From Macrostomum lignano (lineage: Eukaryota): 64,000 bases of DNA. Where the stretch lies: positions 1 through 64,000 of the forward strand of contig NIVC01002813.1 in NCBI GenBank assembly GCA_002269645.1, given 5' to 3'. The first letter of the stretch is position 1. Each line of letters starts with the position of its first letter. This document shows, in pieces, positions 7,470 to 29,528 of the stretch. The position numbers and the translations under genes were made by a program. The notes below the pieces were generated by a model that worked only from the letters and a program-made list of their open reading frames with translations, did not search any database and had not been told where the DNA came from.

Positions 7470-7496
7470 CTGACGGGATATGTAAAGAGACTAGCT

Positions 7497-8076
<580 letters not shown>

Positions 8077-8077
8077 C

Positions 8078-8979: not shown

Positions 8980-9420
8980 TCTCTCCCCTCTCTCCCCTCT
9001 CTCCTCCTCCCCTCTCTCCTCCTCCCCTCTCTCCTCCTCCCCTCTCTCCTCCTCCCCTCTCTCCTTCTCCCCTCTCTCCTTCTCCCCTCTCTCCTTCTCA
9101 CCTCTCTCCTTCTCCCCTCTCTCCTTCTCCCCTCTCTCCTTCTCCCCTCTCTCCTTCTCCCCTCTCTCATTCTCCCCTCTCTCCTCCTCCCCTCTCTCCT
9201 TCTCCCCTCTCTCCTCCTCCCCTCTCTCCTTCTCCCCTCTCTCCTCCTCCCCTCTCTCTTTCTCCCCTCTCTCCTTCTCCCCTCTCTCCTTCTCCCCTCT
9301 CTCCTCCTCCCCTCTCTCCTTCTCCCCTCTCTCCTCCTCCCCTCTCTCTTTCTCCCCTCTCTCCTTCTCCCCTCTCTCCTCCTCCCCTCTCTCCTTCTCC
9401 CCTCTCTCCTTCTCCCCTCC
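8980..9420. repeat. 15-bp polypyrimidine minisatellite (CTCCTTCTCCCCTCT)n in intron 1 of the Ig-mucin gene
   Basis: Direct inspection; it translates as SPLSF/SPLSS repeats. Confidence 0.95.
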
Positions 9421-9511
9421 TTCCCTAGCTCCCCTTCTCCATTCCCTTTTCTACCCTCTTCAATTAAAATGCTTCAAAAAATTTCAAATTAAAAAAACAA
9501 TTTCCGCTCAC

Positions 9512-10337: not shown

Positions 10338-11120
10338 GGCCGCATGTTGGCTGCAACTGCCCGAGCTCGATTCCAAGACAAAACGAAATGCAAAGCGAGA
10401 GAAATGCGAAGTAGAATTTCAAGAGTGCTGGGGTGGGGGTCCGGTCTGCAGGCAATTTATTTAAAACACACAACTGCCTCACCCATTCACACACTGACCC
10501 CCTGGGCAGCTGTCTCAGTGCTCAGGCCTTGCCCTGCTCAGGACCAATAGGGGGCCAGTCTGGCAGGGCAGACGGGTCCAAAACCGAGCCCAGTGAGCAG
10601 CTGAATCTCGAACAAGTCCGAATTTGGACAGGAGAAGCTCGCACGGCTCTGCGGCAAATAATTCTGAGATAATGTACAGCTGAGTTGCAGCTGAGCCCGA
10701 ACTTGGGCCTACTCTGCTTTTTTATCTTCTGAACGGCAAAGGCGAGAGCGGGAGAGTCTCAGCTGAACTGTCGCCCTTCCTAAGAATATTTATTTCATTC
10801 TGTGCAAGGCACTGCTCTGCAGTCAGTCAGAGACCTGCAGCCGCCCCCACCGCCCCCAACTCCCCGCTTCATCTCAGCAGCAGCTCACAGAACTCACCAT
10901 GCAGTTTCTGCGGACCTCAACTGAGCTTCACCTGCACTGTGGCTAGGGGGGGGGGCTAAAGACCGGAAAAGCAATAATTGCACCTCTTCATTAGCTGCAA
11001 GGTTCGTCCAGTGAAAACTTATTCACACCTGTATTGCTTGGCAGCTCAAAGTCTTCTTTTACATCTTTTATTGTGACAATTTTGAGAGTTGTACCACTAA
11101 AGCAATAAATAGATAAGATA

Positions 11121-11797
11121 CAGGTGATTTTGAGTGACAACCTCATCATTAACCGGTTGACTCAGGTGATTTTATGGGTGACAACCTCATCACTAACCCG
11201 TTGACTCAGGTGATTTTATGGGTGACAACCTCATCACTAACCCGTTGACTCAGGTGATTTTATGAGTGACAACCTCATCATTAACCCGTTTGACTCAGGT
11301 GATTTTATGAGTGACAACCTCATCACTAACCCGTTGACTCAGGTGATTTTATGGGTGACAACCTCATCACTAACCCGTTGACTCAGGTGATTTTATGAGT
11401 GACAACCTCATCATTAACCCGTTGACTCAGGTGATTTTATGGGTGACAACCTCATCACTAACCCGTTGACTCAGGTGATTTTATGAGTGACAACCTCATC
11501 ATTAACCCGTTTGACTCAGGTGATTTTATGGGTGACAACCTCATCACTAACCCGTTGACTCAGGTGATTTTATGAGTGACAACCTCATCATTAACCCGTT
11601 GACTCAGGTGATTTTATGGGTGACAACCTCATCATTAACCCGTTTGACTCAGGTGATTTTATGGGTGACAACCTCATCACTAACCCGTTGACTCAGGTGA
11701 TTTTATGGGTGACAACCTCATCATTAACCCGTTGACTCAGGTGATTTTATGGGTGACAACCTCATCATTAACCGGTTGACTCAGGTGATTTTATGAA
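11121..11797. repeat. 44-bp minisatellite, 15 units plus a partial unit
   Basis: Unit CAGGTGATTTTATGGGTGACAACCTCATCACTAACCCGTTGACT (44/45 bp), upstream of the Ig-mucin gene. Confidence 0.95.
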
Positions 11798-12876
11798 TGG
11801 CAAACTCCTTAAAAAACCCGTGAGCTCAGACAGGCAACAAACTCACAACGCTTCGCAAGAGTTTCAGGCAATCACCAGACGAACTCCAAGCATAGCGTGC
11901 AAACACCCGACCAGTTGAGTCCGTTAAATAATTGAATGCAGACTTGAGTTCTCTCTTGTGTGTCTACTCAGATTCACGCAGTTTAGCTGAGCACACCTGC
12001 CATAAAAAGCTATTGAATAATGAATGCATTGGCACGAACGCATCTGCGGTTGCCAAACCCAAGTTTCACCCCTACCCTATGGCTGACCATTGATTTTCTT
12101 TAGAAATAGTTTCAACAAGGAACTTCTCTGCCTGCAGACGAAATCCGCTTTCTTCAATAGACTGAATGCCCCATAGCAGTTGCAATAGAAGCCAACCCCA
12201 GTGGACGGCCGCAGAGTGCTGAGGGCTCCAGTTATGAAAGTGAAAGTTTTGAGCAAACAGTCTTGGGGCCTGGGGGTGTGGGCCGGCGGCACGAGGCGGG
12301 ACCTGTGGCACCGGCCCTTTCCCAAAATTTTCTTCTTCTGCCCTTACCCATCTCAGCTTCTGCTTGTTCAAAATAGTCATGGACAGCTGTTACTAGACAA
12401 CTGGACTGCAAACTCAACCTGATTCCAAATGAAGTTTTTCATTTTACGAACAGGAGACAGTCAGATAAAAAGTATCGCGTGAAGTTATGCGCTTTAAAAT
12501 TCGCGAATGAGCCGAGACGTTCAAAGAAAAAAACGACGAAATCAAGCGAGCTCTTACCGCTCCAGACTCCGCCTCACTCAGTAGGACTCCCTGGATGGAA
12601 GAGAAACTTAAAAATAGAAATCTTCAGGCACAGCAACACGCAGAGATGCGCGCTCGCGCCTGCGTGGGCGTCACCGGTGCGTGAAGGCGTAGCGCCCTCC
12701 CCCTCTTTCTGCAGGTAAGAGCGGCAAATATTCTACGGCACAACATAGTAAAGTGAGGGGATCAGTGCTGCTTTTGTGGGGCGCTCTGGGCAATGCTTGG
12801 GGCTGGCCAGATGGAGCAGACCTCTGCTCAACTGCTTCGGTTTTCTGATTTATTACAGCTGAAATCTGCGTTGAAA

Positions 12877-12890
12877 ACAGACAGACACTA

Positions 12891-12925
<35 letters not shown>

Positions 12926-12928
12926 AAC

Positions 12929-12973
<45 letters not shown>

Positions 12974-12980
12974 AAGAAAC

Positions 12981-13047
<67 letters not shown>

Positions 13048-13070
13048 CTAAGACACTAAGACAGACACTA

Positions 13071-13157
<87 letters not shown>

Positions 13158-13196
13158 AACACAGACAGACAGACAGACAGACAGACAGAAAGAAAC

Positions 13197-13227
<31 letters not shown>

Positions 13228-13272
13228 CTAAGACAGACACTAAGACAGACAGACAGACAGACAGAAAGAAAC

Positions 13273-13319
<47 letters not shown>

Positions 13320-13338
13320 CTAAGACACTAAGACACTA

Positions 13339-13391
<53 letters not shown>

Positions 13392-13458
13392 CTAAGACAG
13401 ACAGACAGACACTAAAACAGACCGACAGACACTAAAACAGACCGACAGACAGACAGAC

Positions 13459-13497
<39 letters not shown>

Positions 13498-13498
13498 G
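12877..13498. repeat. (AGAC)n microsatellite with ACTA/AAAC interruptions
   Basis: Direct inspection. Confidence 0.95.
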
Positions 13499-14731
13499 GG
13501 CTAGAAGATCGAGCATTCTCCTGGAAAAGCAGAGGTGAAACTTGAACGATTTTCATTGCAACCGAGCGCTTGTTCATGCAATACATTCATGTTGAGCATT
13601 TTGTGCACGGTGAGCAGCGGTGGGCGGGCAGCTCAGCAAACAGTCTTGAGCGATTACGCAACAGTTGGCCAGTCAATCGCAATTTATGGCTCGTTAGCAA
13701 CGCAACTCGAAGACATGCAGCGACACCGAATGCTTGCCACCGAGAGGCCCCAGGGCCTGGGAGCCGAGAATGGGGCGGTGATGCAACACGTGGAAATTGT
13801 CTCAAAAGCACGCACGCCCTACGTCCAGCCCGCCAGGAAAACAGAACAAAACAGACAGACTCAGACAGAGCAGCAAATTAGCATAGGTTTGATGCAATGG
13901 CATCATTAAGGTTAGGGCGGATAAAAGTATTTTTAAAATCGCCATCGTACTACTCATTAGAAAACTGCTAGTAGAAAAAACGCATTTTTTGCCACAAAAT
14001 AAAAGAAAGTGAGAAAATTACTGTAGAAATTTGAGGAATCCGAAAATTGAAGATACGAGTATGTTTAATATATTTAATATAGTAACATACGTATTAGATT
14101 TACAAAACAAGAAATTGCAGTTCAGTGTTCAACAGTCTTGGCAGAGTAAAGTGCACAGATATGTATATTTTAATATATAAAAAATTTGGTGCAGTAGAAC
14201 TACAGGTTGCAATCATCATCTACTATAAATATCAATTCGTCTTCATAACCAATGAATAAAAACTAAAATTTTATATCGCAAAGAATGTCCAACAATATCC
14301 AGCATACTACTCACCAAAGTAGCAACATTAGCGCATGTCTATATGTCAAAATATTCAATTAGACCCTGAAAATTGCTTTGAAAAACATCGCGTAAAGATA
14401 AAAAAGCCACTTAAAATCCAAATGTAATAATATCACATTCCTGGAACAATATATAAGAATTCGATTGCAGACACAAGTTGGCTGCACTTTACATGTGTTT
14501 ATACAGGTACAAGTATGTACAGTAGGTGAAATAAGTAATGTACAAAGGTTTTATAAAAGTACACTAAGACATGTAAATTCATTTCCAACAAGGCGCCACG
14601 CGTAAAAGCGGGAGGCATTTGAAAACTCTAAAAATGATGCGAGTTACATGTCCGCACAAACTACTTGTCAGGGTAGTAGCTAGTAATTGTTAAACAAGCA
14701 ATCACTGGCAAGATTTGGTTGCTAGGGCGGC

Positions 14732-16609
14732 TCAGATGAGCACAGAGCTGCCGTGAACGCCTCCGATAAAAACTCCTGCATCTCCTCCGCCGCCGCCGCC
14801 TCCGACTCCTGGAGACGTGGCGCTTCGATATGACGGATGGCGAGGCAGGCTGGCCCGAGGCGAGGTCACGTGACCAAAGGCTGGCCCGCCAACTGCGGCA
14901 GTGGAAGATGCCGAAGCGGCAGCAGCCGCAACAGCCGCAGCCGCGGCCGCCTCGCTTCTCGTGCTGACAAAGATTGGCTTCTGCTCGGCAGAGGAGCGGC
15001 TGAGGTGCGGCGGCGGCTGCTGCTGGCCGCGGGTGCTCAGCCTGGCGTCGCCGCCGTCAAGCTGGTCGAGGCCTGAAAACGCTGCATCGGGTGAGATGGG
15101 AGCTCGACTGCGGGAACTCGAAACAGCGGCGGCGGCGGGCTGCTGATTGCGCAATGGCCTGTGAATGCTGTGCTGCTGCTGCTGCTGCTGAGGGCTGAAC
15201 AGCCGCTGCTGAGCCGAAGTCCCAGTTGGCTGCTGCTGTTGCTGCTGCTGAGTCGGCGGCGGGGGCGGCTGAGACACCGGCGGCTGGAACAGCGCCGGAG
15301 ACGGAGGCGGCGGAAATTCTTCGTCATCGCCCAGCTGGGCAAACGGCGGCTGCTGCTGCTGCCGGAAGATCGGAGCGGCGCCAGACGCGTAGGGCGTGGC
15401 TGGGCCGCCAGGCACGGACTCGGAGGACAGGCGGAAGGTCCGGTTCACGACTCCGCCGCCGCCGGCTGTCGGATTGAACTGTGGCAGCTTCGGCAGCTGC
15501 TGAACAGGCGGCGGAGGAGGCGGCGGTGGATCATCTAGTTCATCGTCCCTAGCGTAGGCCAGGTTGTCATGGAAACCAATAGCCGACGATGGCCGAGGAA
15601 TCGACGCAGCGGTGAGACTAACGGCGGCGCCAGCGCCAGTTGGCGCCGCTTGAGGAGCCGCCGCTGCCCGCCTGCGACTTTTGCGCTTGCGGCCGCTGCT
15701 GCCGGCGCTGCGGTGCCGCCTTCTCGCCTGCTGCTGCGGCGGCCGGTGCCGCGGGTAATTGGACCCGGCCGTGTAGGGCGGCGGCCGGGCGTCGTCGATG
15801 AACTCGCTGGCCTCTCCCTCGTCGCTGTTGACTCGCAGTGGCGGCGGCTGCTGCTGTTGCGGCGGCGCGCCGGTCACTTGAAGCTCAACCCAGGGCAGGG
15901 GGTCGCGCATGACGCTGCTCCGACGACTGCCGGCCGAGCGGCGGCCCAGCGAATTGTCGGCGTAGCTGGCGGCAGCCGCGGCCGCGGCGGCGTCGGACAG
16001 GCTGGCCTCGGGGTGGTCGCCGGGCCGGCGCATCATCCGGCGGCCTGGCCGGATCTTCACAAAGCTGGAGTTGGCCGACACGGGCAGGTAGGCGGAGGCG
16101 GGGCCGCCGGGCCGTTCGAATTTGCGCAGCTCCTCGCGCAGCTGGCAGGCGAGGCAGCAGAGCAGCAGGATGCTGAGCAGGGCGGCGCCGCCCCCCGCTG
16201 CGCAGTGCAGCAGCTCGGCTGTTCGATAATCCACCAGGCACCACAAAGCGGAACTATCTGTGCCGTTATTCTGGTTGCCTAGCAACGCAACCGGAAGCCG
16301 CAGCTGCAGCCGATAATCTGAGCAGCCAATCAGCAGCTTTCGCCAGTAGCTGGTCTTGCCAGTGCCCCAGTGCAGCACGCTGGCCGCCCGCTCCTGCAGG
16401 CCGTCGACGTCCAGGTAGAAGCAGATCAGGAAGGCGTTCCAGCCGAGCCAGGCCAGCAGCCAGGCGCCAACAGCGTAGCAGAAGCCCGGCCGCAGCTGGC
16501 AGACGGCTGCCACGGCGAACAGGCAGCTGAGGAGAGTGGCGAAGTCGAAGATGCAGCCCGTCCACTGGTAGCCAAGCAGATCCAGCACCAGCCGCTCAAC
16601 ACAGATAGC
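14732..16609 (-). CDS. NKAIN: Na+/K+-ATPase beta-subunit-interacting protein homologue, copy A, exon 2
   Basis: Acceptor TTTTCTTCCACCAG| at 16610. AICVERLVLDLLGYQW...QLRP...WLGWNAFLICFYL matches the NKAIN hallmarks ERQ(I/V)FDFLGYQW and WN.F.ICFYL. A ~450-aa Pro/Gln/Ser-rich tail follows. Confidence 0.9.
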   Translation of the reverse strand, partial: AICVERLVLDLLGYQWTGCIFDFATLLSCLFAVAAVCQLRPGFCYAVGAWLLAWLGWNAFLICFYLDVDGLQERAASVLHWGTGKTSYWRKLLIGCSDYRLQLRLPVALLGNQNNGTDSSALWCLVDYRTAELLHCAAGGGAALLSILLLCCLACQLREELRKFERPGGPASAYLPVSANSSFVKIRPGRRMMRRPGDHPEASLSDAAAAAAAASYADNSLGRRSAGSRRSSVMRDPLPWVELQVTGAPPQQQQPPPLRVNSDEGEASEFIDDARPPPYTAGSNYPRHRPPQQQARRRHRSAGSSGRKRKSRRRAAAAPQAAPTGAGAAVSLTAASIPRPSSAIGFHDNLAYARDDELDDPPPPPPPPVQQLPKLPQFNPTAGGGGVVNRTFRLSSESVPGGPATPYASGAAPIFRQQQQPPFAQLGDDEEFPPPPSPALFQPPVSQPPPPPTQQQQQQQPTGTSAQQRLFSPQQQQQQHSIHRPLRNQQPAAAAVSSSRSRAPISPDAAFSGLDQLDGGDARLSTRGQQQPPPHLSRSSAEQKPIFVSTRSEAAAAAAVAAAAASASSTAAVGGPAFGHVTSPRASLPRHPSYRSATSPGVGGGGGGGDAGVFIGGVHGSSVLI

Positions 16610-17857
16610 CTGGTGGAAGAAAAGTAGATTTTGTCAATGACAGAGTAAATTGTCCAAAACTTTTCTTACTGTTTAATTGTCCTGAAAAATATTATTATAT
16701 TTAAATAGTTAAGCAAAGAATAACTTTATTTTAGTCATGTCATAAAGAATTTTTAATCAGCTTTTCAGATCTTTCTAAATTAGTAAAATATATTTACTGT
16801 CTTTTTGTCAGATGATTTTTTGTCAGGTGATTTTTTGTCAGAAAATATTGATCAAATATTGCTAAAACAAATACTTTCTAGAGAACTATATTTGTATTGT
16901 TTACAATTACTCAAGTAAGAGACTACAGACAATATCCTTAAAGAAATTAGATTTTTTTTGCTTTTTCTATTCTGTTTAGGTCTGGATTTCACCCAACTTT
17001 CATTTTAGTCCTCTAGTTTTGGAGGTAATCTTATATAAAGAGAGCTCTGGTTTTTGAACTATTTTGTCAATTGGGTTATCAAGAATCAAGACCAATATCT
17101 AGACTAAAACCAGAAAATTATAAAAATGCCTTATTATTTTTATATCTATTGAATTATCCAGATTTTTCTCTAATATCTAGTCTACCAAAAATATAGCAAA
17201 TTCAATATGAAAACTAAACAACTATTCTCTTTTTGTCTAGGTTTTAATCTATTCTTTTCTAGTACCATTGCAATACAAACTAGATAAACACTGGGGAAGC
17301 AGTTTTAAAATCAAATATTTAACTTAGCCAAAGCTAGTCTTAACCTAGTTTAGTTACAAAATGAGGAGGGAAAAAAGAGATAATGGCTCTTTTACAAATG
17401 TCAATATATCCATAGTGTATAAAGTAGTTATAACCATTAAAATATATATTATAATATTAGCACAATGAAATAGTATATTTATTCAAATATGCTATTGTTA
17501 CTAGTTTAATAAATAAATAATGTAACACTAATGGCTTGGCTTGCCTTTTCTACAAAAAATTAGAAGGTTGGTTGGGCTTTTTATTACTTCAATTTATTCT
17601 TAGTATCTATTTATAACTTTTAATTAAAATACATTGGCAATATGAATATAGATATAGCCATAGATATTAATATACAATATGCAACACCTAAGTATTATCT
17701 ATCAACTGACTTAAATGTATACATTAAAATTTTAAATTAAACGCAAGTTCCATTTTTTTCCTTAGCATATTTTTAATTAGATTTAACTAAGAAATCTTGT
17801 CTTTGACCCTTAACTAGATAACAAAAATTTTTTTTGATAAGATTATAAAACACTTAC

Positions 17858-17938
17858 CATCAAAATCATTGTCACTGTAACTGAAACCGTCTTTAAACAG
17901 CATGATGCACATGTGGGTGAGTCGCAATAATAAGCCAT
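17858..17938 (-). CDS. NKAIN: NKAIN homologue, copy A, exon 1 (27 codons)
   Basis: MAYYCDSPTCASCCLKTVSVTVTMILM with phase-0 donor ATG|GTAAGT. The Cys-rich N-terminus and intron position parallel vertebrate NKAIN (MGCCSGRCTL...|VCVLER). Confidence 0.85.
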
Positions 17939-19884
17939 GTTTTGAAATAAAATATATAAAGATAATTTTATGTAACTTGTAAGGTAAAATTTTGCTGAAA
18001 CTTTAACTATTGGGACAATATCCTATGAACATGGTACATAGGTAATAGTACCTAGCTGGGGTATATAACTATAAAACTAAGATCTAATCTGATTCCAATT
18101 TCTCGATATACTGTTGGATGTAAAGTGCATCGCGTTCGTGTTCACTGACGTTGCTTGTCAATATACGTCTACGATGAGTTAAGCGATGGTAACCCTTTCT
18201 GCGAAACTAATCGCTTCCTACACTTTTAATTCTGTGCGATCTAATGCAAATAAAATGCCGAGAAAAAACAAATGATGCAAAAATACAACAATCTTTCGAC
18301 GTAATAAAACTTTTACAGCTTTTAATAAAGAAACAATATGTACTTCCTGTAGGTTCTTTATTCAATGCACCAAACAAACATGCTAAAAATTCTGTACAGT
18401 TTAGGAGGCACGAAAATAAAAAAATGTGCTCGCGGAACCCGCGAGCCCGCGCGATTCGATTCTTACAAGTTTATCTAGTTTTTAATGAATACTTGATTGA
18501 TTATGCTTTATGGATGTGTTTGGTATATTGTCGTATGAAATTCAAAAGCGTATAGCGTCAGCGTCTTGCTGATTATTTATATTGTTTTATGTGAAAACTG
18601 ATTATTAACTCGTATATATCATGACAATTATCGCTGTAACAAGTTAATCCTACACTCTACTGTGGCACAGCGAGTTCTATAAATCTCCCATTTCCCCGAC
18701 AGTACCCGAAAACATAAGTGTTCAGTATTCGGTATACATAGATTCTTGTTGGGTTCTGTATTTTTTTATCATTACAATGTCATGCCTTCCCCTTGAAAAA
18801 TTGTGGCTGTCCCTTAACCTTAAGTATAAACGATATTTTGATTTATCGCATTTCTAGTATGAATTATTAGTTATTCTACCAATTCATGGCATAGTTTTAA
18901 ACTATTAGTTAATATATGCTGCATTATTTATGTGTATTTTGTAATCACCAGAGGTTATCAATTTTTAATAATAATAGTTCTAATTTTTATTCAATACTTT
19001 TAAAATACTTTTGCAATAATCTATGGTATATGTGTGGTGAGAATATAAAATAAGAGGGCAATAGGATTAATTTTTCTAAGAAAAGATTATTGTGCCTATC
19101 TTTACTATAGTGTAATAAATATCTGAAAATTTAATTCTTGCTTTTAATAGGGACCTACATTCCATCAATCCTAATCGACCTAACACTTTTTGAAATGCAC
19201 TTATACCCTTGTTATATGCTATTTTAAATGACAGAATAAACAACAAAGAATGGAATAAAGTTATGAATGTATCAGTTGTCATTGATTTTCTTTTTATTAT
19301 TTAGTTCTACTTCTAGTGCCTAGCTAAATAATACTAATTCTAAAGCATTCAATAATAAAAGATTATGATTATGATTGTAAATTAAAAATATCTATGCTCT
19401 ATGGTGGATATATTGCCATTGGTCATTAAACAAAAAGTCAATATAAAATTTTAATTTAGTTTGATTTTCAGTAGATAGTTTTAACATACGCAAAATTTCT
19501 GGTGTATATATTGGTATAAGAAAATTATTTGATCTAAATTCAAAATATTTGAAACTGGTTTATTTGAATTTCAGTGTTTTTAGTTGAAATTGACTTCTCT
19601 ACTAAAATAAATAGTGCTGAAGGCTAGAATTTTTTGCTTGTTTGTCTTTAATTAATCATACAAGTATTAAGTAATTCTTGGTTACATATTTCTTTAAATT
19701 AATTTTTGTATTGTTTTAGTTTTTCTTTATTTATTCTTACAGCAAAGAAACAAAAGTGAAGTTTAGTCATATTTTGCTATAATCATGATGAGTAAGAAGC
19801 CTTCTATTTAATTTTCAGTAAGTTCTGATAGAAAATAAGCAACAAAGCCAAGTCAAGCAGCTTTGAAGACAATAAAAGACTAAA

Positions 19885-20088
19885 ATGTCAAGCTCAAGCA
19901 AATTGCCAGCTCCTCAGCATTTGAGCGATGAGGACAGGACTCTGCGTCACCGCGCTTCCCTGGCTGACCTCGCCTTCGATGCCCAAGGCAGCGACAGGCA
20001 GCAGCAGCTGGTGAGGCGGTCGGCCTCTTCTTACAGGCCCTGTCGTTGTGGTTGTCGTAGTCGTTGTCGTGGACGTTGTCGTCGTTGA
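19885..20088 (+). pseudogene. Truncated duplicate of the 469-aa Ser/Arg/Pro-rich gene (52 native aa plus 15 aa read from the antisense Ig exon)
   Basis: Identical to 29529-29684 up to the junction at 20040/20041, then CRCGCRSRCRGRCRR*. Confidence 0.75.
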
Positions 20089-20637
20089 TGTAGACGTCGA
20101 AGTGGTGGGCTCGGACACGCTGATGGCGTACTGCGAGCGCATCTGCTTGTACTGGCAGGCGAAGCTGCCGTCCAGCCGCCTGCTGGCATTCCGGAACCGG
20201 TACGTCAGCACAACTTCGGACAGGTGGGCAGCGCCGGACGCCGCCGGCCTCCGGTCGATGCTGCAGACGGCATCGGCCAGTTCGGGCACCCGCTGTCGGC
20301 AGGCCTCCAGGCTGCCGGCGCTGGCGCACAGCGGCTTGCTGCAGTCCTCGAAGCAGGCGATTGAGCCGCCGCCACCGCTGCCGCCGTCGGGCAGGCGAGT
20401 CAGCGGGCAGAAGAGGCGCACCGCCAGGCCGTTGATGACGCCGAAGGCTCGGCATTCGAACAGCAGGTCGTCGCCGACGAAAAACCGGCCGGTGCTGCCG
20501 CTGCCCGCCGGAAATCCGGCCTCGACACCCTCTCCGATGGCGGCAAATGCGGCAGCTCTGCGCGGCTCGGTGGCGATGAAGATTTGCAAACTGACGAGGA
20601 TGAAGTTGAGGAGTCTGGACAGCCTCATCTGCACCAT
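19894..20637 (-). CDS. Chimeric TM-less Ig-domain protein (247 aa) created by the duplication junction
   Basis: 199 aa of signal peptide, Ig domain and partial Thr stalk are fused in frame to 48 aa (GPVRRGRPPH...SWQFA*) from the antisense strand of the neighbouring gene. The upstream region is duplicated intact. Expression is unknown. Confidence 0.55.
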   Translation of the reverse strand: MVQMRLSRLLNFILVSLQIFIATEPRRAAAFAAIGEGVEAGFPAGSGSTGRFFVGDDLLFECRAFGVINGLAVRLFCPLTRLPDGGSGGGGSIACFEDCSKPLCASAGSLEACRQRVPELADAVCSIDRRPAASGAAHLSEVVLTYRFRNASRRLDGSFACQYKQMRSQYAISVSEPTTSTSTSTTTTSTTTTTTTTTTGPVRRGRPPHQLLLPVAALGIEGEVSQGSAVTQSPVLIAQMLRSWQFA

Positions 20638-21424
20638 GGCCGCATGTTGGCTGCAACTGCCCGAGCTCGATTCCAAGACAAAACGAAATGCAAAGCGAGA
20701 GAAATGCGAAGTAGAATTTCAAGAGTGCTGGGGTGGGGGTCCGGTCTGCAGACAATTTATTTAAAACACACAACTGCCTCACCCATTCACACACTGACCC
20801 CCTGGGCAGCTGTCTCAGTGCTCAGGCCTTGCCCTGCTCAGGACCAATAGGGGGCCAGTCTGGCAGGGCAGACGGGTCCAAACCCGAGCCCAGTGAGCAG
20901 CTGAATCTCGAACAAGTCCGAATTTGGACAGGCGAAGCTCGCACGGCTCTGCGGCAAATAATTCTGAGATAATGTACAGCTGAGTTGCAGCTGAGCCCGA
21001 ACTTGGGCCTACTCTGCTTTTTTATCTTCTGAACGGCAAAGGCTGAGAGCGGGAGAGTCTCAGCTGAACTGTCGCCCTTCCTAAGAATATTTATTTCATT
21101 CTGTGCAAGGCACTGCTCTGCAGTCAGTCAGAGACCTGCAGCCGCCCCCGCCGCCCTCAACTACCCGCTTCATCTCAGCAGCAGCTCACAGAACTCACCA
21201 TGCAGTTTCTGCGGACCTCAACTGAGCTTCACCTGCACTGTGGCTAGGGAGGGGGGGGGCTGAAGACCGGAAAAGCAATAATTGCACCTCTTCATTAGCT
21301 GTAAGGTTCGTCTAGTGAAAACTTATTCACACCTGTATTGCTTGGCAGCTCAAAGTCTTCTTTTACATCTTTTATTGTGACAATTTTGAGAGTTGTACCA
21401 CTAAAGCAATAAATAGATAAGATA

Positions 21425-21838
21425 CAGGTGATTTTATGGGTGACAACCTCATCATTAACCCGTTGATTCAGGTGATTTTATGGGTGACAACCTCATCATT
21501 AACCCATTGATTCAGGTGATTTTATGGGTGACAACCTCATCATTAACCCGTTTGACTCAGGTGATTTTATGGGTGACAACCTCATCACTAACCCGTTGAC
21601 TCAGGTGATTTTATGGGTGACAACCTCATCATTAACCCGTTGACTCAGGTGATTTTATGGGTGACAACCTCATCATTAACCCGTTTGACTCAGGTGATTT
21701 TATGGGTGACAACCTCATCACTAACCCGTTGACTCAGGTGATTTTATGGGTGACAACCTCATCATTAACCCGTTGACTCAGGTGATTTTATGGGTGACAA
21801 CCTCATCATTAACCGGTTGACTCAGGTGATTTTATGGA
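21425..21838. repeat. 44-bp minisatellite, copy B, 9 units plus a partial unit
   Basis: Same unit as 11121-11797. Confidence 0.95.
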
Positions 21839-22916
21839 TGGCAAACTCCTTAAAAAACCCGTGAGCTCAGACAGGCAACACACTCACAAGGCTTCGCAAG
21901 AGTTTCAGGCAATCACCAGACGAACTCCAAGCATAGCGTGCAAACACCCGACCAGTTGAGTCCGTTAAATAATTGAATGCAGACTTGAGTTCTCTCTTGT
22001 GTGTCTACTCAGATTCACGCAGTTTAGCTGAGCACACCTGCCATAAAAAGCTATTGAATAATGAATGCATTGGCACGAACGCATCTGCGGTTGCCAAACC
22101 CAAGTTTCACCCCTACCCTATGGCTGACCATTGATTTTCTTTAGAAATAGTTTCAACAAGGAACTTCTCTGCCTGCAGACGAAATCCGCTTTCTTCAATA
22201 GACTGAATGCCCCATAGCAGTTGCAATAGAAGCCAACCCCAGTGGACGGCCGCAGAGTGCTGAGGGCTCCAGTTATGAAAGTGAAAGTTTTGAGCAAACA
22301 GTCTTGGGGCCTGGGGGTGTGGGCCGGCGGCACGAGGCGGGACCTGTGGCACCGGCCCTTTCCCAAAATTTTCTTCTTCTGCCCTTACCCATCTTAGCTT
22401 CTGCTTGTTCAAAATAGTCATGGACAGCTGTTACTAGACAACTGGACTGAAACTCAACCTGATTCCAAATGAAGTTTTTCATTTTACGAACAGGAGACAG
22501 TCAGATAAAAAGTATCGCGTGAAGTTATGCGCTTTAAAATTCGCGAATGAGCCGAGACGTTCAAAGAAAAAAACGACGAAATCAAGCGAGCTCTTCCCGC
22601 TCCAGACTCCGCCTCACTCAGTAGGACTCCCTGGATGGAAGAGAAACTTAAAAATAGAAATCTTCAGGCACAGCAACACGCAGAGATGCGCGCTCGCGCC
22701 TGCGTGGGCGTCACCGGTGCGTGAAGGCGTAGCGCCCTCCCCCTCTTTCTGCAGGTAAGAGCGGCAAATATTCTACGGCACAACAGAGTAAAGTGAGGGG
22801 ATCAGTGCTGCTTTTTTGGGGCGCTCTGGGCAATGCTTGGGGCTGGCCAGATGGAGCAGACCTCTGCTCAACTGCTTCGGTTTTCTGATTTATTATAGCT
22901 GAAATCTGCGTTGAAA

Positions 22917-23152
<236 letters not shown>

Positions 23153-24385
23153 GGCTAGAAGATCGAGCATTCTCCTGGAAAAGCAGAGGTGAAACTTGAA
23201 CGATTTTCATTGCAACCGAGCGCTTGTTCATGCAATACATTCATGTTGAGCATTTTGTGCACGGTGAGCAGCGGTGGGCGGGCAGCTCAGCAAACAGTCC
23301 TGAGCGATTACGCAACAGTTGGCCAGTCAACCGCAATTTATGGCTCGTTAGCAAGGCAACTCGAAGACATGCAGCGACACCGAATGCTTGCCACCGAGAG
23401 GCCCCAGGGCCTGGGAGCCGAGAATGGGGCGGTGATGCAACACGTGGAAATTGTCTCAAAAGCACGCACGCCCTACGTCCAGCCCGCCAGGAAAACAGAA
23501 CAAAACAGACAGACTCAGACAGAGCAGCAAATTAGCATAGGTTTGATGCAATGGCATCATTAAGGTTAGCGCGGATAAAAGTATTTTTAAAATCGCCATC
23601 GTACTACTCATTAGAAAACTGCTAGTAGAAAAAACGCATTTTTGCCACAAAATAAAAGAAAGTGAGAAAATTACTGCAGAAATTTGAGGAATCCGAAAAT
23701 TGAAGATACGAGCATGTTTAATATATTTAATATAGTAACATACGTATTAGATTTACAAAACAAGAAATTGCAGTTCAGTGTTCAACAGTCTTGGCAGAGT
23801 AAAGTGCACAGATATGTATAGTTTAATATATAAAACATTTGATGCAGTAGAACTACAGGTTGCAATCATCATCTACTATAAATATCAATTCGTCTTCATA
23901 ACCAATGAATCAGAACTAAAATTTAATATCGCAAAGAATATCCAACAATATCCAGCATACTACTCACCAAAGTAGCAACATTAGCGCATGTCTATATGTC
24001 AAAATATTCAATTAGACCCTGAAAATTGCTTTGAAAAACATCGCTTAAAGATAAAAAAGCCACTTAAAATCCAAATGTAATAATATCACATTCCTGGAAC
24101 AATATATAAGAATTCGATTGCAGACACAAGTTGGCTGCACTTTACATGTGTTTATACAGGTACAAGTATGTACAGTAGGTGAAATAAGTCATGTACAAAG
24201 GTTTTATAAAAGTACACTAAGACATGTAAATTCATTTCCAACAAGGCGCCACGCGTAAAAGCGGGAGGCATTTGAAAACTCTAAAAAATGATGCGAGTTA
24301 CATGTCCGCACAAACTACTTGTCAGGGTAGAAGCTAGTAATTGTTAAACAAGCAATCACTGGCAAGATTTGGTTGCTAGGGCGGC

Positions 24386-26254
24386 TCAGATGAGCACAGA
24401 GCTGCCGTGAACGCCTCCGATAAAAACTCCAGCATCCCCTTCGCCGCCACCGCCTCCAACTCCTGGAGACGTGGCGCTTCGATATGACGGATGGCGAGGC
24501 AGGCTGGCCCGAGGCGAGGTCACGTGACCAAAGGCTGGCCCGCCAACTGCCGCAGTGGAAGATGCCGAAGCGGCAGCAGCCGCAACAGCTGCAGCCGCGG
24601 CCGCCTCGCTTCTCGTGCTGACAAAGATTGGCTTCTGCTCGGCAGAGGAGCGGCTGAGGTGCGGCGGCGGCTGCTGCTGGCCGCGGGTGCTCAGCCTGGC
24701 GTCGCCGCCGTCAAGCTGGTCGAGGCCTGAAAACGCTGCATCGGGTGAGATGGGAGCTCGACTGCGGGAACTCGAGACAGCGGCGGCGGTGGGCTGCTGA
24801 TTGCGCAATGGCCTGTGAATGCTGTGCTGCTGCTGAGGGCTGAACAGCCGCTGCTGAGCCGAAGTCCCAGTTCGCTGCTGCTGTTGCTGTTGAGTCGGCG
24901 GCGGGGGCGGCTGAGACACCGGCGGCTGGAACAGCGCCGGAGACGGAGGCGGCGGAAACTCCTCGTCATCGCCCAGCTGGGCAAACGGCGGCTGCTGCTG
25001 CTGCTGCCGGAAGATCGGAGCGGCGCCAGACGCGTAGGGCGTGGCCGGGCCGCCAGGCACGGACTCGGAGGACAGGCGGAAGGTCCGGTTCACGACTCCG
25101 CCGCCGCCGGCTGTCGGATTGAACTGTGGCAGCTTCGGCAGCTGCTGAACAGGCGGCGGAGGAGGCGGCGGTGGATCATCTAGTTCGTCGTCCCTAGCGT
25201 AGGCCAGGTTGTCATGGAAACCAATAGCCGACGATGGCCGAGGAATCGACGCGGCGGTGAGACTGGCGGCGGCGTTAGCGCCAGTTGGAGCCGCTTGAGG
25301 AGCCGCCGCTGCCCGCCTGCGACTTTTGCGCTTGCGGCCGCTGCTGCCGGCGCTGCGGTGCCGCCTTCTCGGCTGCTGCTGCGGCGGCCGGTGCCGCGGG
25401 TCCATGGACCCGGCCGTGTAGGGCGGCGGCCGGGCGTCGTCGATGAACTCGCTGGCCTCTCCCTCGTCGCTGTTGACTCGCAGCGGCGGCGGCTGCTGCT
25501 GTTGCGGCGGCGCGCCGGTCACCTGAAGCTCAACCCAGGGCAGGGGGTCGCGCATCACGCTGCTCCGACGACTGCCGGCCGAGCGGCGGCCCAGCGAATT
25601 GTCGGCGTAGCTGGCGGCAGCCGCGGCTGCGGCGGCGTCCGACAAGCTGGCCTCGGGGTGTTCGCCGGGCCGGCGCATCATCCGGCGGCCTGGCCGGATC
25701 TTCACAAAGCTGGAGTTGGCCGACACGGGCAGGTAGGCGGAGGCGGGGCCACCGGGCCGGTCGAATTTGCGCAGCTCCTCGCGCAGCTGGCAGGCGAGGC
25801 AGCAGAGCAGCAGGAGGCTGAGCAGGGCGGCGCCGCCCCCCGCTGCGCAGTGCAGCAGCTCGGCTGTTCGATAATCCACCAGGCACCACCAAGCGGAACT
25901 ATCTGTGCCGTTATTCTGGTTGCCTAGCAACGCAACCGGAAGCCGCAGCTGCAGCCGATAATCTGAGCAGCCAATCAGCAGCTTTCGCCAGTAGCTGGTC
26001 TTCCCAGTGCCCCAGTGCAGCACGCTGGCCGCCCGCTCTTGCAGGCCGTCGACGTCCAGGTAAAAGCAGATCAGGAAGGCGTTCCAGCCGAGCCAGGCCA
26101 GCAGCCAGGCGCCAACAGCGTAGCAGAAGCCCGGCCGCAGCTGGCAGACGGCTGCCACGGCGAACAGGCAGCTGAGGAGAGTGGCGAAGTCGAAGATGCA
26201 GCCCGTCCACTGGTAGCCAAGCAGATCCAGCACCAGCCGCTCAACACAGATAGC
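24386..26254 (-). CDS. NKAIN: NKAIN homologue, copy B, exon 2
   Basis: Intact ORF, 3 codons shorter than copy A because of polyQ length changes, with the same acceptor. Confidence 0.9.
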   Translation of the reverse strand, partial: AICVERLVLDLLGYQWTGCIFDFATLLSCLFAVAAVCQLRPGFCYAVGAWLLAWLGWNAFLICFYLDVDGLQERAASVLHWGTGKTSYWRKLLIGCSDYRLQLRLPVALLGNQNNGTDSSAWWCLVDYRTAELLHCAAGGGAALLSLLLLCCLACQLREELRKFDRPGGPASAYLPVSANSSFVKIRPGRRMMRRPGEHPEASLSDAAAAAAAASYADNSLGRRSAGSRRSSVMRDPLPWVELQVTGAPPQQQQPPPLRVNSDEGEASEFIDDARPPPYTAGSMDPRHRPPQQQPRRRHRSAGSSGRKRKSRRRAAAAPQAAPTGANAAASLTAASIPRPSSAIGFHDNLAYARDDELDDPPPPPPPPVQQLPKLPQFNPTAGGGGVVNRTFRLSSESVPGGPATPYASGAAPIFRQQQQQPPFAQLGDDEEFPPPPSPALFQPPVSQPPPPPTQQQQQQRTGTSAQQRLFSPQQQHSIHRPLRNQQPTAAAVSSSRSRAPISPDAAFSGLDQLDGGDARLSTRGQQQPPPHLSRSSAEQKPIFVSTRSEAAAAAAVAAAAASASSTAAVGGPAFGHVTSPRASLPRHPSYRSATSPGVGGGGGEGDAGVFIGGVHGSSVLI

Positions 26255-27501
26255 CTGGTGGAAGAAAAGTAGATTTTGTCAATGACAGAGTAAATTGTCC
26301 AAAACTTTTCTTACTGTTTAATTGTCCTGAAAAATATTATTATATTTAAATAGTTAAGCAAAGAATAACTTTATTTTAGTCATGTCATAAAGAATTTTTA
26401 ATCAGCTTTTCAGATCTTTCTAAATTAGTAAAATAAATTTACTGTCTTTTTGTCAGATGATTTTTTGTCAGGTAATTTTTTGTCAGAAAATATTGATCAA
26501 ATATTGCTAAAACAAATACTTTCTAGAGAACTATATTTGTATTGTTTACAATTACTCAAGTAAGAGACTACAGACAATATCCTTAAAGAAATTAGATTTT
26601 TTTTGCTTTTTCTATTCTGTTTAGGTCTGGATTTCACCCAACTTTCATTTTAGTCCTCTAGTTTTGGAGGTAATCTTATATAAAGAGAGCTCTGGTTTTT
26701 GAACTATTTTGTCAATTGGGTTATCAAGAATCAAGACCAATATCTAGACTAAAACCAGAAAATTATAAAAATGCCTTATTATTTTTATATCTATTGAATT
26801 ATCCAGATTTTTCTCTAATATCTAGTCTACCAAAAATATAGCAAATTCAATATGAAAACTAAACAACTATTCTCTTTTTGTCTAGGTTTTAATCTATTCT
26901 TTTCTAGTACCATTGCAATACAAACTAGATAAACACTGGGGAAGCAGTTTTAAAATCAAATATTTAACTTAGCCAAAGCTAGTCTTAACCTAGTTTAGTT
27001 ACAAAATGAGGAGGGAAAAAAGAGATAATGGCTCTTTTACAAATGTCAATATATCCATAGTGTATAAAGTAGTTATAACCATTAAAATATATATTATAAT
27101 ATTAGCACAATGAAATAGTATATTTATTCAAATATGCTATTGTTACTAGTTTAATAAATAAATAATGTAACACTAATGGCTTGGCTTGCCTTTTCTACAA
27201 AAAATTAGAAGGTTGGTTGGGCTTTTTATTACTTCAATTTATTCTTAGTATCTATTTATAACTTTTAATTAAAATACATTGGCAATATGAATATAGATAT
27301 AGCCATAGATATTAATATACAATATGCAACACCTAAGTATTATCTATCAACTGACTTAAATGTATACATTAAAATTTTAAATTAAACGCAAGTTCCATTT
27401 TTTTCCTTAGCATATTTTTAATTAGATTTAACTAAGAAATCTTGTCTTTGACCCTTAACTAGATAACAAAAATTTTTTTGATAAGATTATAAAACACTTA
27501 C

Positions 27502-27582
27502 CATCAAAATCATTGTCACTGTAACTGAAACCGTCTTTAAACAGCATGATGCACATGTGGGTGAGTCGCAATAATAAGCCAT
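27502..27582 (-). CDS. NKAIN: NKAIN homologue, copy B, exon 1
   Basis: Identical to 17858-17938. Confidence 0.85.
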
Positions 27583-29528
27583 GTTTTGAAATAAAATATA
27601 TAAAGATAATTTTATGTAACTTGTAAGGTAAAATTTTGCTGAAACTTTAACTATTGGGACAATATCCTATGAACATGGTACATAGGTAATAGTACCTAGC
27701 TGGGGTATATAACTATAAAACTAAGATCTAATCTGATTCCAATTTCTCGATATACTGATGGATGTAAGGTGCATCGCGTTCGTGTTCACTGACGTTGCTT
27801 GTCAATATACGTCTACGATGAGTTAAGCGATGGTAACCCTTTCTGCGAAACTAATAGCTTTCTACACTTTTAATTCTGTGCGATCTAATGCAAATAAAAT
27901 GCCGAGAAAAAACAAATGATGCAAAAATACAACAATCTTTCGACGTAATAAAACTTTTACAGCTTTTAATAAAGAAACAATATGTACTTCATGTAGGTTC
28001 TTTATTCAATGCACCAAACAAACATTCTAAAAATTCTGTACAGTTTAGGAGGCACGAAAATAAAAAAATGTGCTCGCGGAACCCGCGAGCCCGCGCGATT
28101 CGATTCTTACAAGTTTATCTAGTTTTTAATGAATACTTGATTGATTATGCTTTATGGATGTGTTTGGTATATTGTCGTATGAAATTCAAAAGCGTATAGC
28201 GTCAGCGTCTTGCTGATTATTTATATTGTTTTATGTGAAAACTGATTATTAACTCGTATATATCATGACAATTATCGCTGTAACAAGTTAATCCTACACT
28301 CTACTGTGGCACAGCGAGTTCTATAAATCTCCCATTTCCCCGACAGTACCCGAAAACATAAGTGTTCAGTATTCGGTATACATAGATTCTTGTTGGGTTC
28401 TGTATTTTTTTATCATTACAATGTCATGCCTTCCCCTTGAAAAATTGTGGCTGTCCCTTAACCTTAACTTAAGTATAAACGATATATTTGATTTATCGCA
28501 TTTCTAGTATGAATTATTAGTTATTCTACCAATTCATGGCATAGTTTTAAACTATTAGTTAATATATGCTGCATTATTTATGTGTATTTTGTAATCACCA
28601 GAGGTTATCAATTTTTAATAGTTCTGATTTTTATTCAATACTTTTAAAATACTTTTGCAATAATCTATGGTATATGTGTGGTGAGAATATAAAATAAGAG
28701 GGCAATAGGATTAATTTTTCTAAGAAAAGATTATTGTGCCTATCTTTACTATAGTGTAATAAATATCTGAAAATTTAATTCTTGCTTTTAATAGGGACCT
28801 ACATTCCATCAATCCTAATCGACCTAACACTTTTTGAAATGCACTTATACCCTTGTTATATGCTATTTTAAATGACAGAATAAACAACAAAGAATGGAAT
28901 AAAGTTATGAATGTATCAGTTGTCATTGATTTTCTTTTTATTATTTAGTTCTACTTCTAGTGCCTAGCTAAATAATACTAATTCCAAAGCATTCAATAAT
29001 AAAAGATTATGATTATGATTGTAAATTAAAAATATCTATGCTCTATGGTGGATATATTGCCATTGGTCATTAAACAAAAAGTCAATATAAAATTTTAATT
29101 TAGTTTGATTTTCAGTAGATAGTTTTAACATACGCAAAATTGCTGGTGTATATATTGGTATAAGAAAATTATTTGATCTAAATTCAAAATATTTGAAACT
29201 GGTTTATTTGAATTTCAGTGTTTTTAGTTGAAATTGACTTCTCTACTAAAATAAATAGTGCTGAAGGCTAGAATTTTTTGCTTGTTTGTCTTTAATTAAT
29301 CATACAAGTATTAAGTAATTCTTTTTTGCATATTTCTTTAAATTAATTTTTGTATTGTTTTAGTTTTTCTTTATTTATTCTTACAGTAAAGAAACAAAAG
29401 TGAAGTTTAGTTTTTTTTTGCTATAATCATGATGAGTAAGAAGCCTTCTATTTAATTTTCAGTAAGTTCTGATAGAAAATAAGCAACAAAGCCAAGTCAA
29501 GCAGCTTTGAAGACAATAAAAGACTAAA

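What the first reader, a model, noticed from the sequence alone, without database searches (positions are those of the whole stretch)
19885..20637. Duplication junction creates a predicted secreted Ig-domain 'decoy' with an antisense-derived C-terminus
Seen: the junction ...TTACAGGCCC|TGTCGTTGTGG... at 20040/20041 has only 1 bp (T) of microhomology. On the minus strand, signal peptide + complete Ig domain + part of the Thr stalk (199 aa) read in frame into 48 aa from the antisense strand of the neighbouring Ser/Arg/Pro gene, then stop. The TM and cytoplasmic exons are absent, the upstream region of the parent gene is duplicated with it, and AATAAA hexamers lie ~160 nt past the stop (19726-19735, minus; the region is AT-rich, so this is weak evidence). 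Inference: a newborn chimeric gene encoding a soluble version of a membrane receptor, able to compete for its ligand.
Basis: partly seen in the sequence, partly recalled or inferred. Interest (0 to 1): 0.75.

Follow-up and report, generated by a model that had tools for sequence, protein, structure and literature searches.

The report
Partial tandem duplication, truncated membrane-protein ORF
A roughly 10-kb stretch of a flatworm (Macrostomum lignano) contig is repeated head-to-tail, and the join fuses the front ends of two unrelated genes tail-to-tail, giving an open reading frame for a membrane protein that has lost its anchor; this is an ordinary, well-described by-product of tandem duplication, with no evidence yet that it does anything or that the draft assembly is right here.

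Summary
The window is Macrostomum lignano Mlig_3_7 contig NIVC01002813.1, positions 1-64000. Bases 9741-20040 and 20041-29685 are direct tandem copies joined with 1 bp of microhomology. On the minus strand, 199 codons of a type I membrane protein (BOX15_Mlig018884g2) run in frame into 48 antisense codons of the neighbouring S/R/P-rich gene. The 247-aa ORF keeps the N-terminal hydrophobic segment and all eight conserved ectodomain cysteines but lacks the TM and cytoplasmic exons.

The other two assembled copies of this block are single-copy, so the duplication is specific to this contig. The geometry is the known "dual promoter gene" class of partial tandem duplicates. A reciprocal 67-aa ORF lies on the plus strand, and NKAIN is the only gene duplicated whole.

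"Ig domain" is plausible but unproven. "Newborn" is overstated: the copies differ by about 0.6-1%. "Decoy" has no support: no ligand, no locus-specific expression data, no signal of selection.

The GenBank annotation has a transcript-derived CDS across the junction, but in the wrong frame. Most 4-copy blocks in this assembly are reported to be errors, so an artefact remains a real possibility. Interest is low.

The parts
9741..20040 (.). Copy A of the direct tandem duplication (10,300 bp). Holds the 5' part of the intact parent gene, NKAIN copy A and the truncated 5' fragment of the S/R/P gene.
   Evidence: Self-BLAST; 3- and 4-way alignments.
20041..29685 (.). Copy B of the tandem duplication (9,645 bp). 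Holds the truncated 5' fragment of the membrane-protein gene, NKAIN copy B and the 5' part of the intact S/R/P gene.
   Evidence: The length difference from copy A is mostly in the 44-bp and (ACAG)n arrays.
20040..20041 (.). Duplication junction (end of the unit joined to its start), with 1-bp (T) microhomology and no N run.
19894..20637 (-). Chimeric ORF of 247 aa plus stop: 199 codons of Mlig018884-type exon 1 (20637-20041) followed by 48 codons (20040-19897) read codon-in-register antisense to S/R/P-gene codons 52 to 5. The TGA stop is the antisense of Ser codon 4.
   Evidence: Hydropathy shows only the N-terminal hydrophobic segment and no TM.
19885..20088 (+). Reciprocal chimeric ORF of 67 aa: 52 codons of the S/R/P gene 5' fragment (identical to 29529-29684) plus 15 codons antisense to the Thr-stalk, then stop.
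19880..20800 (-). GenBank-annotated, transcript-derived CDS (306 aa, 5'-partial) spanning the junction. It is in a different frame from the paralog-conserved one and begins just after an AG at 20803-20802.
   Evidence: no homolog other than itself.
6331..10337 (-). Intact parent gene BOX15_Mlig018884g2 (annotated product 706 aa). Exons are about 10337-9512 (signal, ectodomain, S/T stalk), 8402-8310, 8194-8078 (TM) and 7436-6331 (cytoplasmic tail).
29529..30938 (+). Intact S/R/P-rich gene (469 aa, Mlig020557 family). Its first 52 codons are the source of the duplicated fragment.
14732..17938 (-). NKAIN gene copy A (exon 1 ATG at 17938; terminal exon 16588-14732, 618 aa).
24386..27582 (-). NKAIN gene copy B (exon 1 ATG at 27582; terminal exon 26233-24386, 615 aa). 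NKAIN is the only gene duplicated whole.
19726..19735 (-). Two overlapping AATAAA hexamers about 160 nt past the chimeric stop. They are possible poly(A) signals but not distinctive in this AT-rich spacer.

Best explanation
The window's contig carries a roughly 10-kb direct tandem duplication. Its left breakpoint lies in the Thr-stalk codons of exon 1 of a type I membrane-protein gene (BOX15_Mlig018884g2, minus strand). Its right breakpoint lies after codon 52 of a divergently oriented S/R/P-rich gene (Mlig020557 family, plus strand).

Both 5' ends lie inside the duplicated unit, so the junction places two promoter-bearing 5' gene fragments tail-to-tail. This is the "dual promoter" type of partial duplicate. 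Each fragment reads into the other's antisense strand until a chance stop, giving a 247-aa ORF on the minus strand and a 67-aa ORF on the plus strand.

The blunt join with 1 bp of microhomology points to end-joining or replication template switching (inferred).

The 247-aa ORF is a mechanical by-product of a duplication whose only complete gene is NKAIN. It is probably transcribed at some level, because it keeps the parent's entire upstream context. If translated, it would enter the secretory pathway as an anchorless ectodomain with a short O-glycosylated stalk and a 48-aa unselected tail.

Most likely it is a young, effectively neutral gene relic rather than an evolved decoy.

Shown: the structure, the frames, loss of the TM, the single-copy state at the two paralogous loci, and the divergence figures. 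Inferred: the duplication mechanism, transcription, secretion and neutrality.
For: - Tandem copies and junction.
- ORF anatomy.
- Parent gene: the exon structure, with TM and tail outside the unit.
- Correct frame: the parent frame is the one conserved in paralogs at 42-54% identity with eight aligned cysteines.
- Paralogous loci: L003 and L004 are colinear and single-copy, in the order S/R/P gene, NKAIN, membrane protein, B9.
- Copies are each other's closest relatives: 144 sites group A+B against L003+L004, versus 12 conflicting sites.
- Differences look like real mutations: A and B differ by 42 substitutions outside the converted tract, with Ts:Tv of 1.2, similar to the 1.4 of true paralog differences, and none next to indels. 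There are also 22 indel events. They are therefore two distinct sequences, not one sequence used twice. Heterozygosity within subgenomes of the inbred DV1 line is reported as negligible (PMC10733133).
- No scaffold gap: the window contains no N.
- Annotation: the transcript-evidence-based GenBank annotation has a minus-strand CDS across the junction.
- Known class: the geometry matches the published "dual promoter gene" class (PMC4069613, Fig. 9).
Against: - No raw reads could be examined.
- Published coverage analysis of this same assembly finds that most 4-copy blocks have only 3-fold read coverage and are "most likely erroneously represented paralogs". They make up 11.9% of the assembly by self-alignment but 1.7% by coverage (PMC10733133). 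This block is 4-copy in the assembly.
- Copy A is a mosaic. Between 14189 and 16418 it is identical to the paralogous contigs, while copy B carries 45 private substitutions. This could reflect mixed-paralog consensus or RNA-seq-based Pilon polishing, that is, a locally unreliable assembly.
- The annotated transcript could arise from multi-mapped, soft-clipped reads of the two parent genes.
Confidence: 0.6

Rival explanations
1. Assembly artefact. The genome has one copy of this unit on this subgenome, and the second copy and junction were created by the Canu/Pilon assembly of a neopolyploid genome with three roughly 2%-diverged subgenomes. On this reading the chimeric ORF does not exist in the animal.
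For: - Most 4-copy paralogous blocks in Mlig_3_7 have 3-fold coverage (PMC10733133).
- REAPR scored only about 64% of bases as error-free, and the assembly used errorRate 0.04 and Pilon with RNA-seq (PMC5730564).
- Copy A has a mosaic sequence.
- No second contig carries the junction.
Against: - The junction lies inside a gap-free contig, between two non-homologous unique sequences in direct orientation. An overlap assembler cannot create that without reads containing it (inference).
- The copies differ by mutation-like substitutions (Ts:Tv 1.2) and 22 indels in an inbred line.
Confidence: 0.25
2. Functional secreted decoy. The 247-aa product is expressed, secreted and retained by selection because its ectodomain competes with, or modulates, the full-length membrane protein or its paralogs.
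For: - The N-terminal hydrophobic segment and all eight conserved cysteines are retained, and the TM is lost.
- The full upstream context is retained.
- An annotated transcript covers the whole ORF.
- The start codon is in a GCCATGG context.
- Partial duplicates of surface receptors can act this way, for example NOTCH2NL (bioRxiv 10.1101/221226, listed; mechanism from my own knowledge).
Against: - No ligand or function is known for the family.
- Only two adjacent B-lineage substitutions (one silent, one Ser-to-Gly) fall in 741 nt. An intact ORF is therefore what neutrality predicts.
- The tail is unselected antisense sequence identical to the donor.
- There are no locus-specific expression or protein data.
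Confidence: 0.07
3. Sense-antisense regulator. The two facing promoters drive convergent transcription across 19885-20637, giving double-stranded RNA or antisense transcripts about 99% identical to exon 1 of the membrane-protein gene and the first 156 coding nt of the S/R/P gene. These could dampen one or both parent genes.
For: - The two ATGs face each other 753 bp apart, each with its native upstream region.
Against: - No plus-strand gene model is annotated at the junction.
- No small-RNA or stranded expression data are available here.
- The idea is purely structural inference.
Confidence: 0.05

Closest known systems
"Dual promoter genes", a type of partial or chimeric tandem duplicate described in Drosophila yakuba and D. 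simulans (Rogers et al. 2014, PMC4069613, Fig. 9)
   Same: It is a direct tandem duplication with both boundaries inside coding sequences of oppositely oriented genes. The junction unites two 5' fragments with promoters facing each other. Each fragment recruits the other's antisense as a new 3' coding end, and antisense transcripts are possible.
   Different: It is in a neopolyploid flatworm draft assembly rather than a population sample validated with long reads. The junction is not validated by reads here. One partner encodes a signal-bearing ectodomain, so the truncated product would be secreted.
NOTCH2NL and SRGAP2C-type partial duplicates that yield truncated modulators of the parent protein (own knowledge; NOTCH2NL preprint 10.1101/221226, listed)
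   Same: A partial duplication keeps the 5' exons, including the extracellular N-terminal part, loses the membrane-anchoring and intracellular parts, and gains a short novel C-terminus.
   Different: Those genes have demonstrated expression, secretion or interaction, and evolutionary retention. None of that is shown here, and the parent's function and ligand are unknown.
False (heterotype) duplications in long-read assemblies of polyploid or heterozygous genomes, reported for Mlig_3_7 in PMC10733133
   Same: The block has four assembled copies where three subgenomes are expected. One copy has a mosaic consensus.
   Different: The copies are in tandem within one gap-free contig, with a defined non-homologous junction and mutation-like differences. 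They are not separate redundant scaffolds or gap-flanking repeats.

Membership tests
Partial tandem duplicate of the "dual promoter" type | Direct head-to-tail repeat of one genomic segment | tested here: met
   9741-20040 against 20041-29685, 97-98% identity, same orientation.
Partial tandem duplicate of the "dual promoter" type | Both boundaries fall inside coding sequence of two genes on opposite strands, with both 5' ends inside the unit | tested here: met
   The left boundary follows codon 199 of the minus-strand gene. The right boundary follows codon 52 of the plus-strand gene.
Partial tandem duplicate of the "dual promoter" type | Ancestral single-copy arrangement seen at a comparison locus | tested here: met
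   L003 and L004 are colinear and single-copy across both breakpoints.
Partial tandem duplicate of the "dual promoter" type | Junction physically present in genomic DNA (spanning reads, raised depth) | not testable with these tools
   No read data are available. Indirect evidence: no N, and mutation-like A/B differences. Against: a poor prior for 4-copy blocks in this assembly.
Partial tandem duplicate of the "dual promoter" type | Transcription from one or both promoters across the junction | tested here: inconclusive
   A transcript-derived GenBank CDS covers 19880-20800 on the minus strand. It could stem from multi-mapped reads. No plus-strand model is annotated.
Immunoglobulin-superfamily domain | Significant match to an Ig-family profile | tested here: not met
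   No Ig hit for the window protein at E <= 1 or <= 10. Paralog P0003 gives a marginal PF00047 hit of 22.1 bits against a 21.8 cutoff, over 30 residues only. A profile search of PDB sequences found nothing.
Immunoglobulin-superfamily domain | B-strand Cys and F-strand D-x-G-x-[YF]-x-C motif | tested here: met
   LLFEC (Cys62) and LDGSFAC (Cys161), conserved in paralog P0003. The spacing of 99 residues is unusually long and contains six extra conserved cysteines.
Immunoglobulin-superfamily domain | Beta-sandwich fold matching solved Ig domains | tested here: inconclusive
The AF2 models are mostly beta but low confidence (pLDDT 51.9 and 59.6). For the second model the hits are mixed. None reaches E <= 0.001.
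Soluble decoy receptor | Secretory signal kept, membrane anchor lost, extracellular domain complete | tested here: met
   Hydropathy shows only the N-terminal segment in the chimera, whereas the parent has a TM at about residues 307-330. All eight conserved cysteines lie within residues 62-161. SignalP was not run.
Soluble decoy receptor | Product is made, secreted and binds the parent's ligand | not testable with these tools
   The ligand is unknown. The family is restricted to M. lignano entries in the databases searched.
False duplication (assembly artefact) | Copies identical apart from consensus noise, or the junction sits at a scaffold gap | tested here: not met
   There are 42 substitutions outside the converted tract with Ts:Tv 1.2 and none near gaps, plus 22 indel events. 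The window has zero N.
False duplication (assembly artefact) | Read depth corresponds to one copy fewer than assembled | not testable with these tools
   Only the genome-wide statement is available: most 4-copy blocks have 3-fold coverage (PMC10733133).

The most novel reading that the evidence does not exclude
The junction locus is a real, expressed, young gene pair. The minus-strand transcript would yield a secreted, anchorless ectodomain that modulates signalling by the Macrostomum-restricted Mlig018884 membrane-protein family. Convergent transcription from the facing S/R/P-gene promoter would produce antisense or double-stranded RNA that tunes both parent genes. This would be a caught-in-the-act example of gene birth by partial duplication in a neopolyploid flatworm that can be manipulated by transgenesis.
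Probability: 0.07. Interest if true: 0.5.

Novelty: new member of a known kind. Interest (0 to 1): 0.2.

Why it matters
If the duplication is real, it is a clean, datable example of how one tandem duplication produces three things at once: a whole-gene duplicate (NKAIN) and two truncated chimeric ORFs. One of those ORFs is an anchorless ectodomain, and the organism allows transgenesis and RNAi.

It also flags concrete annotation problems in the reference. One CDS is in the wrong frame, and one NKAIN gene model merges the two copies.

If it is an artefact, it is a useful warning about 4-copy blocks in Mlig_3_7. Either way it does not change current understanding of gene duplication.

Tried and rejected
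- Word-indexed protein search with the ectodomain found nothing, not even the protein's own cluster.
- A concatenated junction-peptide query in three frames returned only the annotated 306-aa protein and the two parent families. No independent assembly or transcript was found that encodes the junction.
- A profile search with the full-length family alignment was swamped by low-complexity words.
- Exact look-up of the 247-aa product found no gene call with that sequence.
- Rfam and tRNA scans of the window were empty.
- The bacterial promoter/terminator scan is irrelevant to a eukaryote and was uninformative.
- Literature search for the locus tags found nothing.
- The UniProt names of family members ("ZP domain-containing", "CUB domain-containing", "Protein kinase domain-containing") were considered. 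They were rejected as evidence because Pfam finds no such domains in these proteins.
- The annotated 306-aa frame was rejected as the true CDS. It has no ATG near its 5' end, and no homolog other than itself was found. The other frame is conserved in paralogs.
- Selection analysis was abandoned: there are only 5 differences in 597 nt.

Full report
**Identity of the window.** An exact-product look-up of the 469-aa plus-strand ORF placed it on GenBank contig NIVC01002813.1 of assembly GCA_002269645.1, at the same coordinates as in the window. The fetched loci are base-for-base identical to the window. The NIVC prefix is the Macrostomum lignano Mlig_3_7 assembly, and cluster names confirm the organism. 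Window coordinates are therefore contig coordinates. The sequence is eukaryotic, with GC-rich exons in AT-rich spacers, no tRNA or Rfam hits, and many tandem arrays.

**The observation.**
- Self-BLAST shows a direct tandem duplication, 9741-20040 (copy A) and 20041-29685 (copy B), at 97-98% identity.
- The junction reads CTTCTTACAGGCCC|TGTCGTTGTGG. Only T20041 is shared by both parental sequences, and there is no N in the window.
- On the minus strand an ATG at 20637 (context GCCATGG) opens 199 codons that are 99% identical to the first 199 codons of the gene starting at 10337.
- The breakpoint falls exactly between codons. The frame then continues for 48 codons and stops at 19894-19896.
- These 48 codons are the in-register reverse complement of codons 52 to 5 of the plus-strand S/R/P-rich gene. 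The stop TGA is the antisense of its Ser codon 4.
- This open tail is not special. Two of the three antisense frames remain open for 48 and 52 codons in this 61% GC segment.
- The AATAAA hexamers at 19726-19735 exist, but the hexamer is frequent in the surrounding AT-rich spacer.

**The parent gene.**
- The GenBank annotation gives a 706-aa product starting at 10337, BOX15_Mlig018884g2.
- Mapping a 96-99%-identical paralog protein onto the window gives four exons: 10337-9512, 8402-8310, 8194-8078 and 7436-6331.
- Hydropathy shows an N-terminal hydrophobic segment and one strong TM at about residues 307-330. The chimera has only the former, and its tail peaks at 1.0 on the Kyte-Doolittle scale.
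- The TM and cytoplasmic exons lie left of 9741 and are not duplicated.
- An exhaustive HMMER search of 1.84 billion representatives found only five clusters, all from M. lignano. They form three paralogous groups that share a signal peptide, a roughly 125-residue ectodomain with eight aligned cysteines, a variable S/T stalk, a GWFY juxtamembrane motif, a TM, and a tail with conserved SGQVYxEPD, FFxRDxxxRHSFHN and coiled-coil motifs.
The annotated CDS at the junction (19880-20800, 306 aa, 5'-partial) is in another frame and matches nothing but itself. It is a longest-ORF artefact.

**Is the ectodomain an Ig domain?**
- Pfam gives no Ig hit on the window protein.
- A paralog gives a marginal hit restricted to the E-F strand motif: 22.1 bits against a cutoff of 21.8.
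- A profile search of PDB sequences found nothing.
- Two AlphaFold models from very shallow alignments are mostly beta but of low confidence: pLDDT 51.9 and 59.6.
The second model gave a mixed list in which VEGFR Ig domains had the best TM-scores. Nothing reached E <= 0.001.
- The hallmark LLFEC ... LDGSFAC pair is present, but 99 residues apart with six extra cysteines between.
- Verdict: Ig-like is plausible, not established.

**Comparison loci.**
- The two other assembled copies of the gene block are NIVC01002823.1 (L003) and NIVC01001441.1 (L004). Both are colinear with the window across both breakpoints and carry one copy of the unit, in the order S/R/P gene, NKAIN, membrane protein, B9.
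- This matches the reported three-subgenome structure of the DV1 genome (PMC10733133).
- In a four-way alignment of 9118 gap-free sites, 144 sites group A+B against L003+L004, and only 12 sites conflict with that grouping. The duplication therefore postdates the subgenome split.
- A differs from B at 1.06% of sites overall, against 2.0-2.5% to L003.
- Nearly half of the A/B differences lie in one tract (14189-16418, the NKAIN terminal exon and its 3' flank). There copy A is identical to both paralogous contigs and copy B has 45 private substitutions.
- That tract could be ectopic gene conversion. It could also be a by-product of polishing with RNA-seq reads, which the assembly used.
- Outside the tract, A and B differ by 42 substitutions (about 0.6%). 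Their transition:transversion ratio is 1.2, similar to the 1.4 of genuine paralog differences, and none lies beside an indel. There are also 22 indel events, including different copy numbers of a 44-bp array and an (ACAG)n array.
- These look like mutations, not consensus noise.

**Real or artefact?**

*For a real duplication.*
- The junction lies inside a gap-free contig, between two unrelated unique sequences in direct orientation. An overlap-layout assembler cannot produce that without reads that contain it (inference).
- The copies are distinct sequences in a line whose within-subgenome heterozygosity is reported as negligible.

*Against.*
- The same paper reports that 4-copy blocks make up 11.9% of Mlig_3_7 by self-alignment but only 1.7% by read coverage. 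[quoted passage not shown]
- The assembly was built from paralogs only about 2% apart, with Canu errorRate set to 0.04, and REAPR scored only 64% of bases as error-free.
- Copy A is a mosaic.

I put the probability that the junction exists in the animal at about 0.7.

**Expression.**
- The GenBank annotation derives from genome-guided transcript assembly, cut at trans-splice and poly(A) sites.
- It contains a minus-strand CDS that starts at 20800, immediately after an AG at 20803-20802, and runs past the chimeric stop to 19880. A transcript model therefore covers the whole 247-aa ORF.
- This is suggestive only. Reads from the two parent genes map to either side of the junction at 98-100% identity, and soft-clipped alignments could create continuous coverage.
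- The annotated product of the parent gene omits seven residues present in the genomic exon. The annotated NKAIN gene runs from exon 1 of copy B to the last exon of copy A. Both point to cross-mapping between copies.

**Selection.**
- Within the 597 parental nucleotides, A and B differ at five sites, four of them synonymous. Only two adjacent changes are on the B lineage: one silent and one Ser91Gly.
- The 156-nt donor segment is identical to the intact S/R/P gene.
- With so few changes, an intact ORF is what neutrality predicts. Nothing can be said about constraint.

**What it is.** The structure is a textbook partial tandem duplicate of the "dual promoter" type: both boundaries lie in coding sequence of oppositely oriented genes, two promoters face each other, and antisense transcripts are possible (PMC4069613, Fig. 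9). The only complete gene gained is NKAIN (Pfam PF05640, E = 1.9e-23), with both copies intact. The 247-aa ORF is best read as a by-product. If expressed, it would be a secreted ectodomain with 26 residues of stalk and a 48-residue unselected tail. A decoy role, by analogy with NOTCH2NL-type partial duplicates, and a sense-antisense regulatory role are both possible but untested. I rate them at about 0.07 and 0.05.

**Verdict.** This is a new member of a known kind, conditional on validating the assembly, and interest is low (0.2). The decisive tests are long reads across 20040/20041, junction k-mer counts, summed depth over the four copies, and stranded RNA-seq across the junction.

Noticed in passing
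window 19880-20800 (-): The GenBank-annotated 306-aa, 5'-partial CDS at the junction is in a frame that has no ATG near its start and no homolog other than itself. The paralog-conserved frame gives the 247-aa ORF instead. It is probably a longest-ORF call in a GC-rich exon.
   Followed up: yes
window 14732-27582 (-): The annotated NKAIN gene (652 aa) spans both duplication copies, from exon 1 of copy B (ATG 27582) to the terminal exon of copy A (stop 14732). Each copy has its own intact exon 1 (17938 and 27582) and its own large exon (618 and 615 aa, with 12 aa mismatches). This is either read-through splicing across the duplication or a multi-mapping artefact.
   Followed up: partly
window 14189-16418 (copy A) vs 23840-26060 (copy B, approx.): Across the NKAIN terminal exon and its 3' flank, copy A is identical to the two paralogous contigs, while copy B has 45 private substitutions. 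In the flanking spacer, A and B are nearly identical and both are about 4% from the paralogs. The cause is gene conversion between subgenomes, or homogenisation by RNA-seq-based Pilon polishing.
   Followed up: partly
window about 9700-9730 (-), exon 1 of the parent gene: The annotated 706-aa product (PAA55072.1) lacks seven residues (SSTSAAA) that the genomic exon encodes in frame. The annotation therefore skips 21 nt, presumably because a transcript from another gene copy was mapped here.
   Followed up: partly
window 7497-8074, 8981-9419, 11121-11807 / 21425-21848, 12877-13498, 33546-34805, 45385-47702, 56496-58116, 60963-63181: The window has dense tandem arrays. (CTA)193 fills intron 3 of the parent gene and a 15-mer array lies in intron 1. 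A 44-mer array has 15.3 copies in copy A and 9.6 in copy B, and there is a long (ACAG)n. Arrays of 21-, 30- and 40-mers, each 1.6-2.3 kb long, create long spurious ORFs.
   Followed up: no
L003 / L004 and proteins P0003, P0015: The parent belongs to a family found only in M. lignano in the databases searched. It has three paralog groups with a conserved cytoplasmic tail (SGQVYxEPD, FFxRDxxxRHSFHN, coiled coil). UniProt's automatic names for members (ZP, CUB, protein kinase domain-containing) are not reproduced by Pfam.
   Followed up: partly
window 20645-20625 and 20786-20757 (-): Two short upstream ORFs (6 and 9 codons) precede the main ATG in the 5' leader. Their copy-A counterparts were not examined. 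The annotated 5' end falls right after an AG dinucleotide, which may be a spliced-leader acceptor.
   Followed up: no
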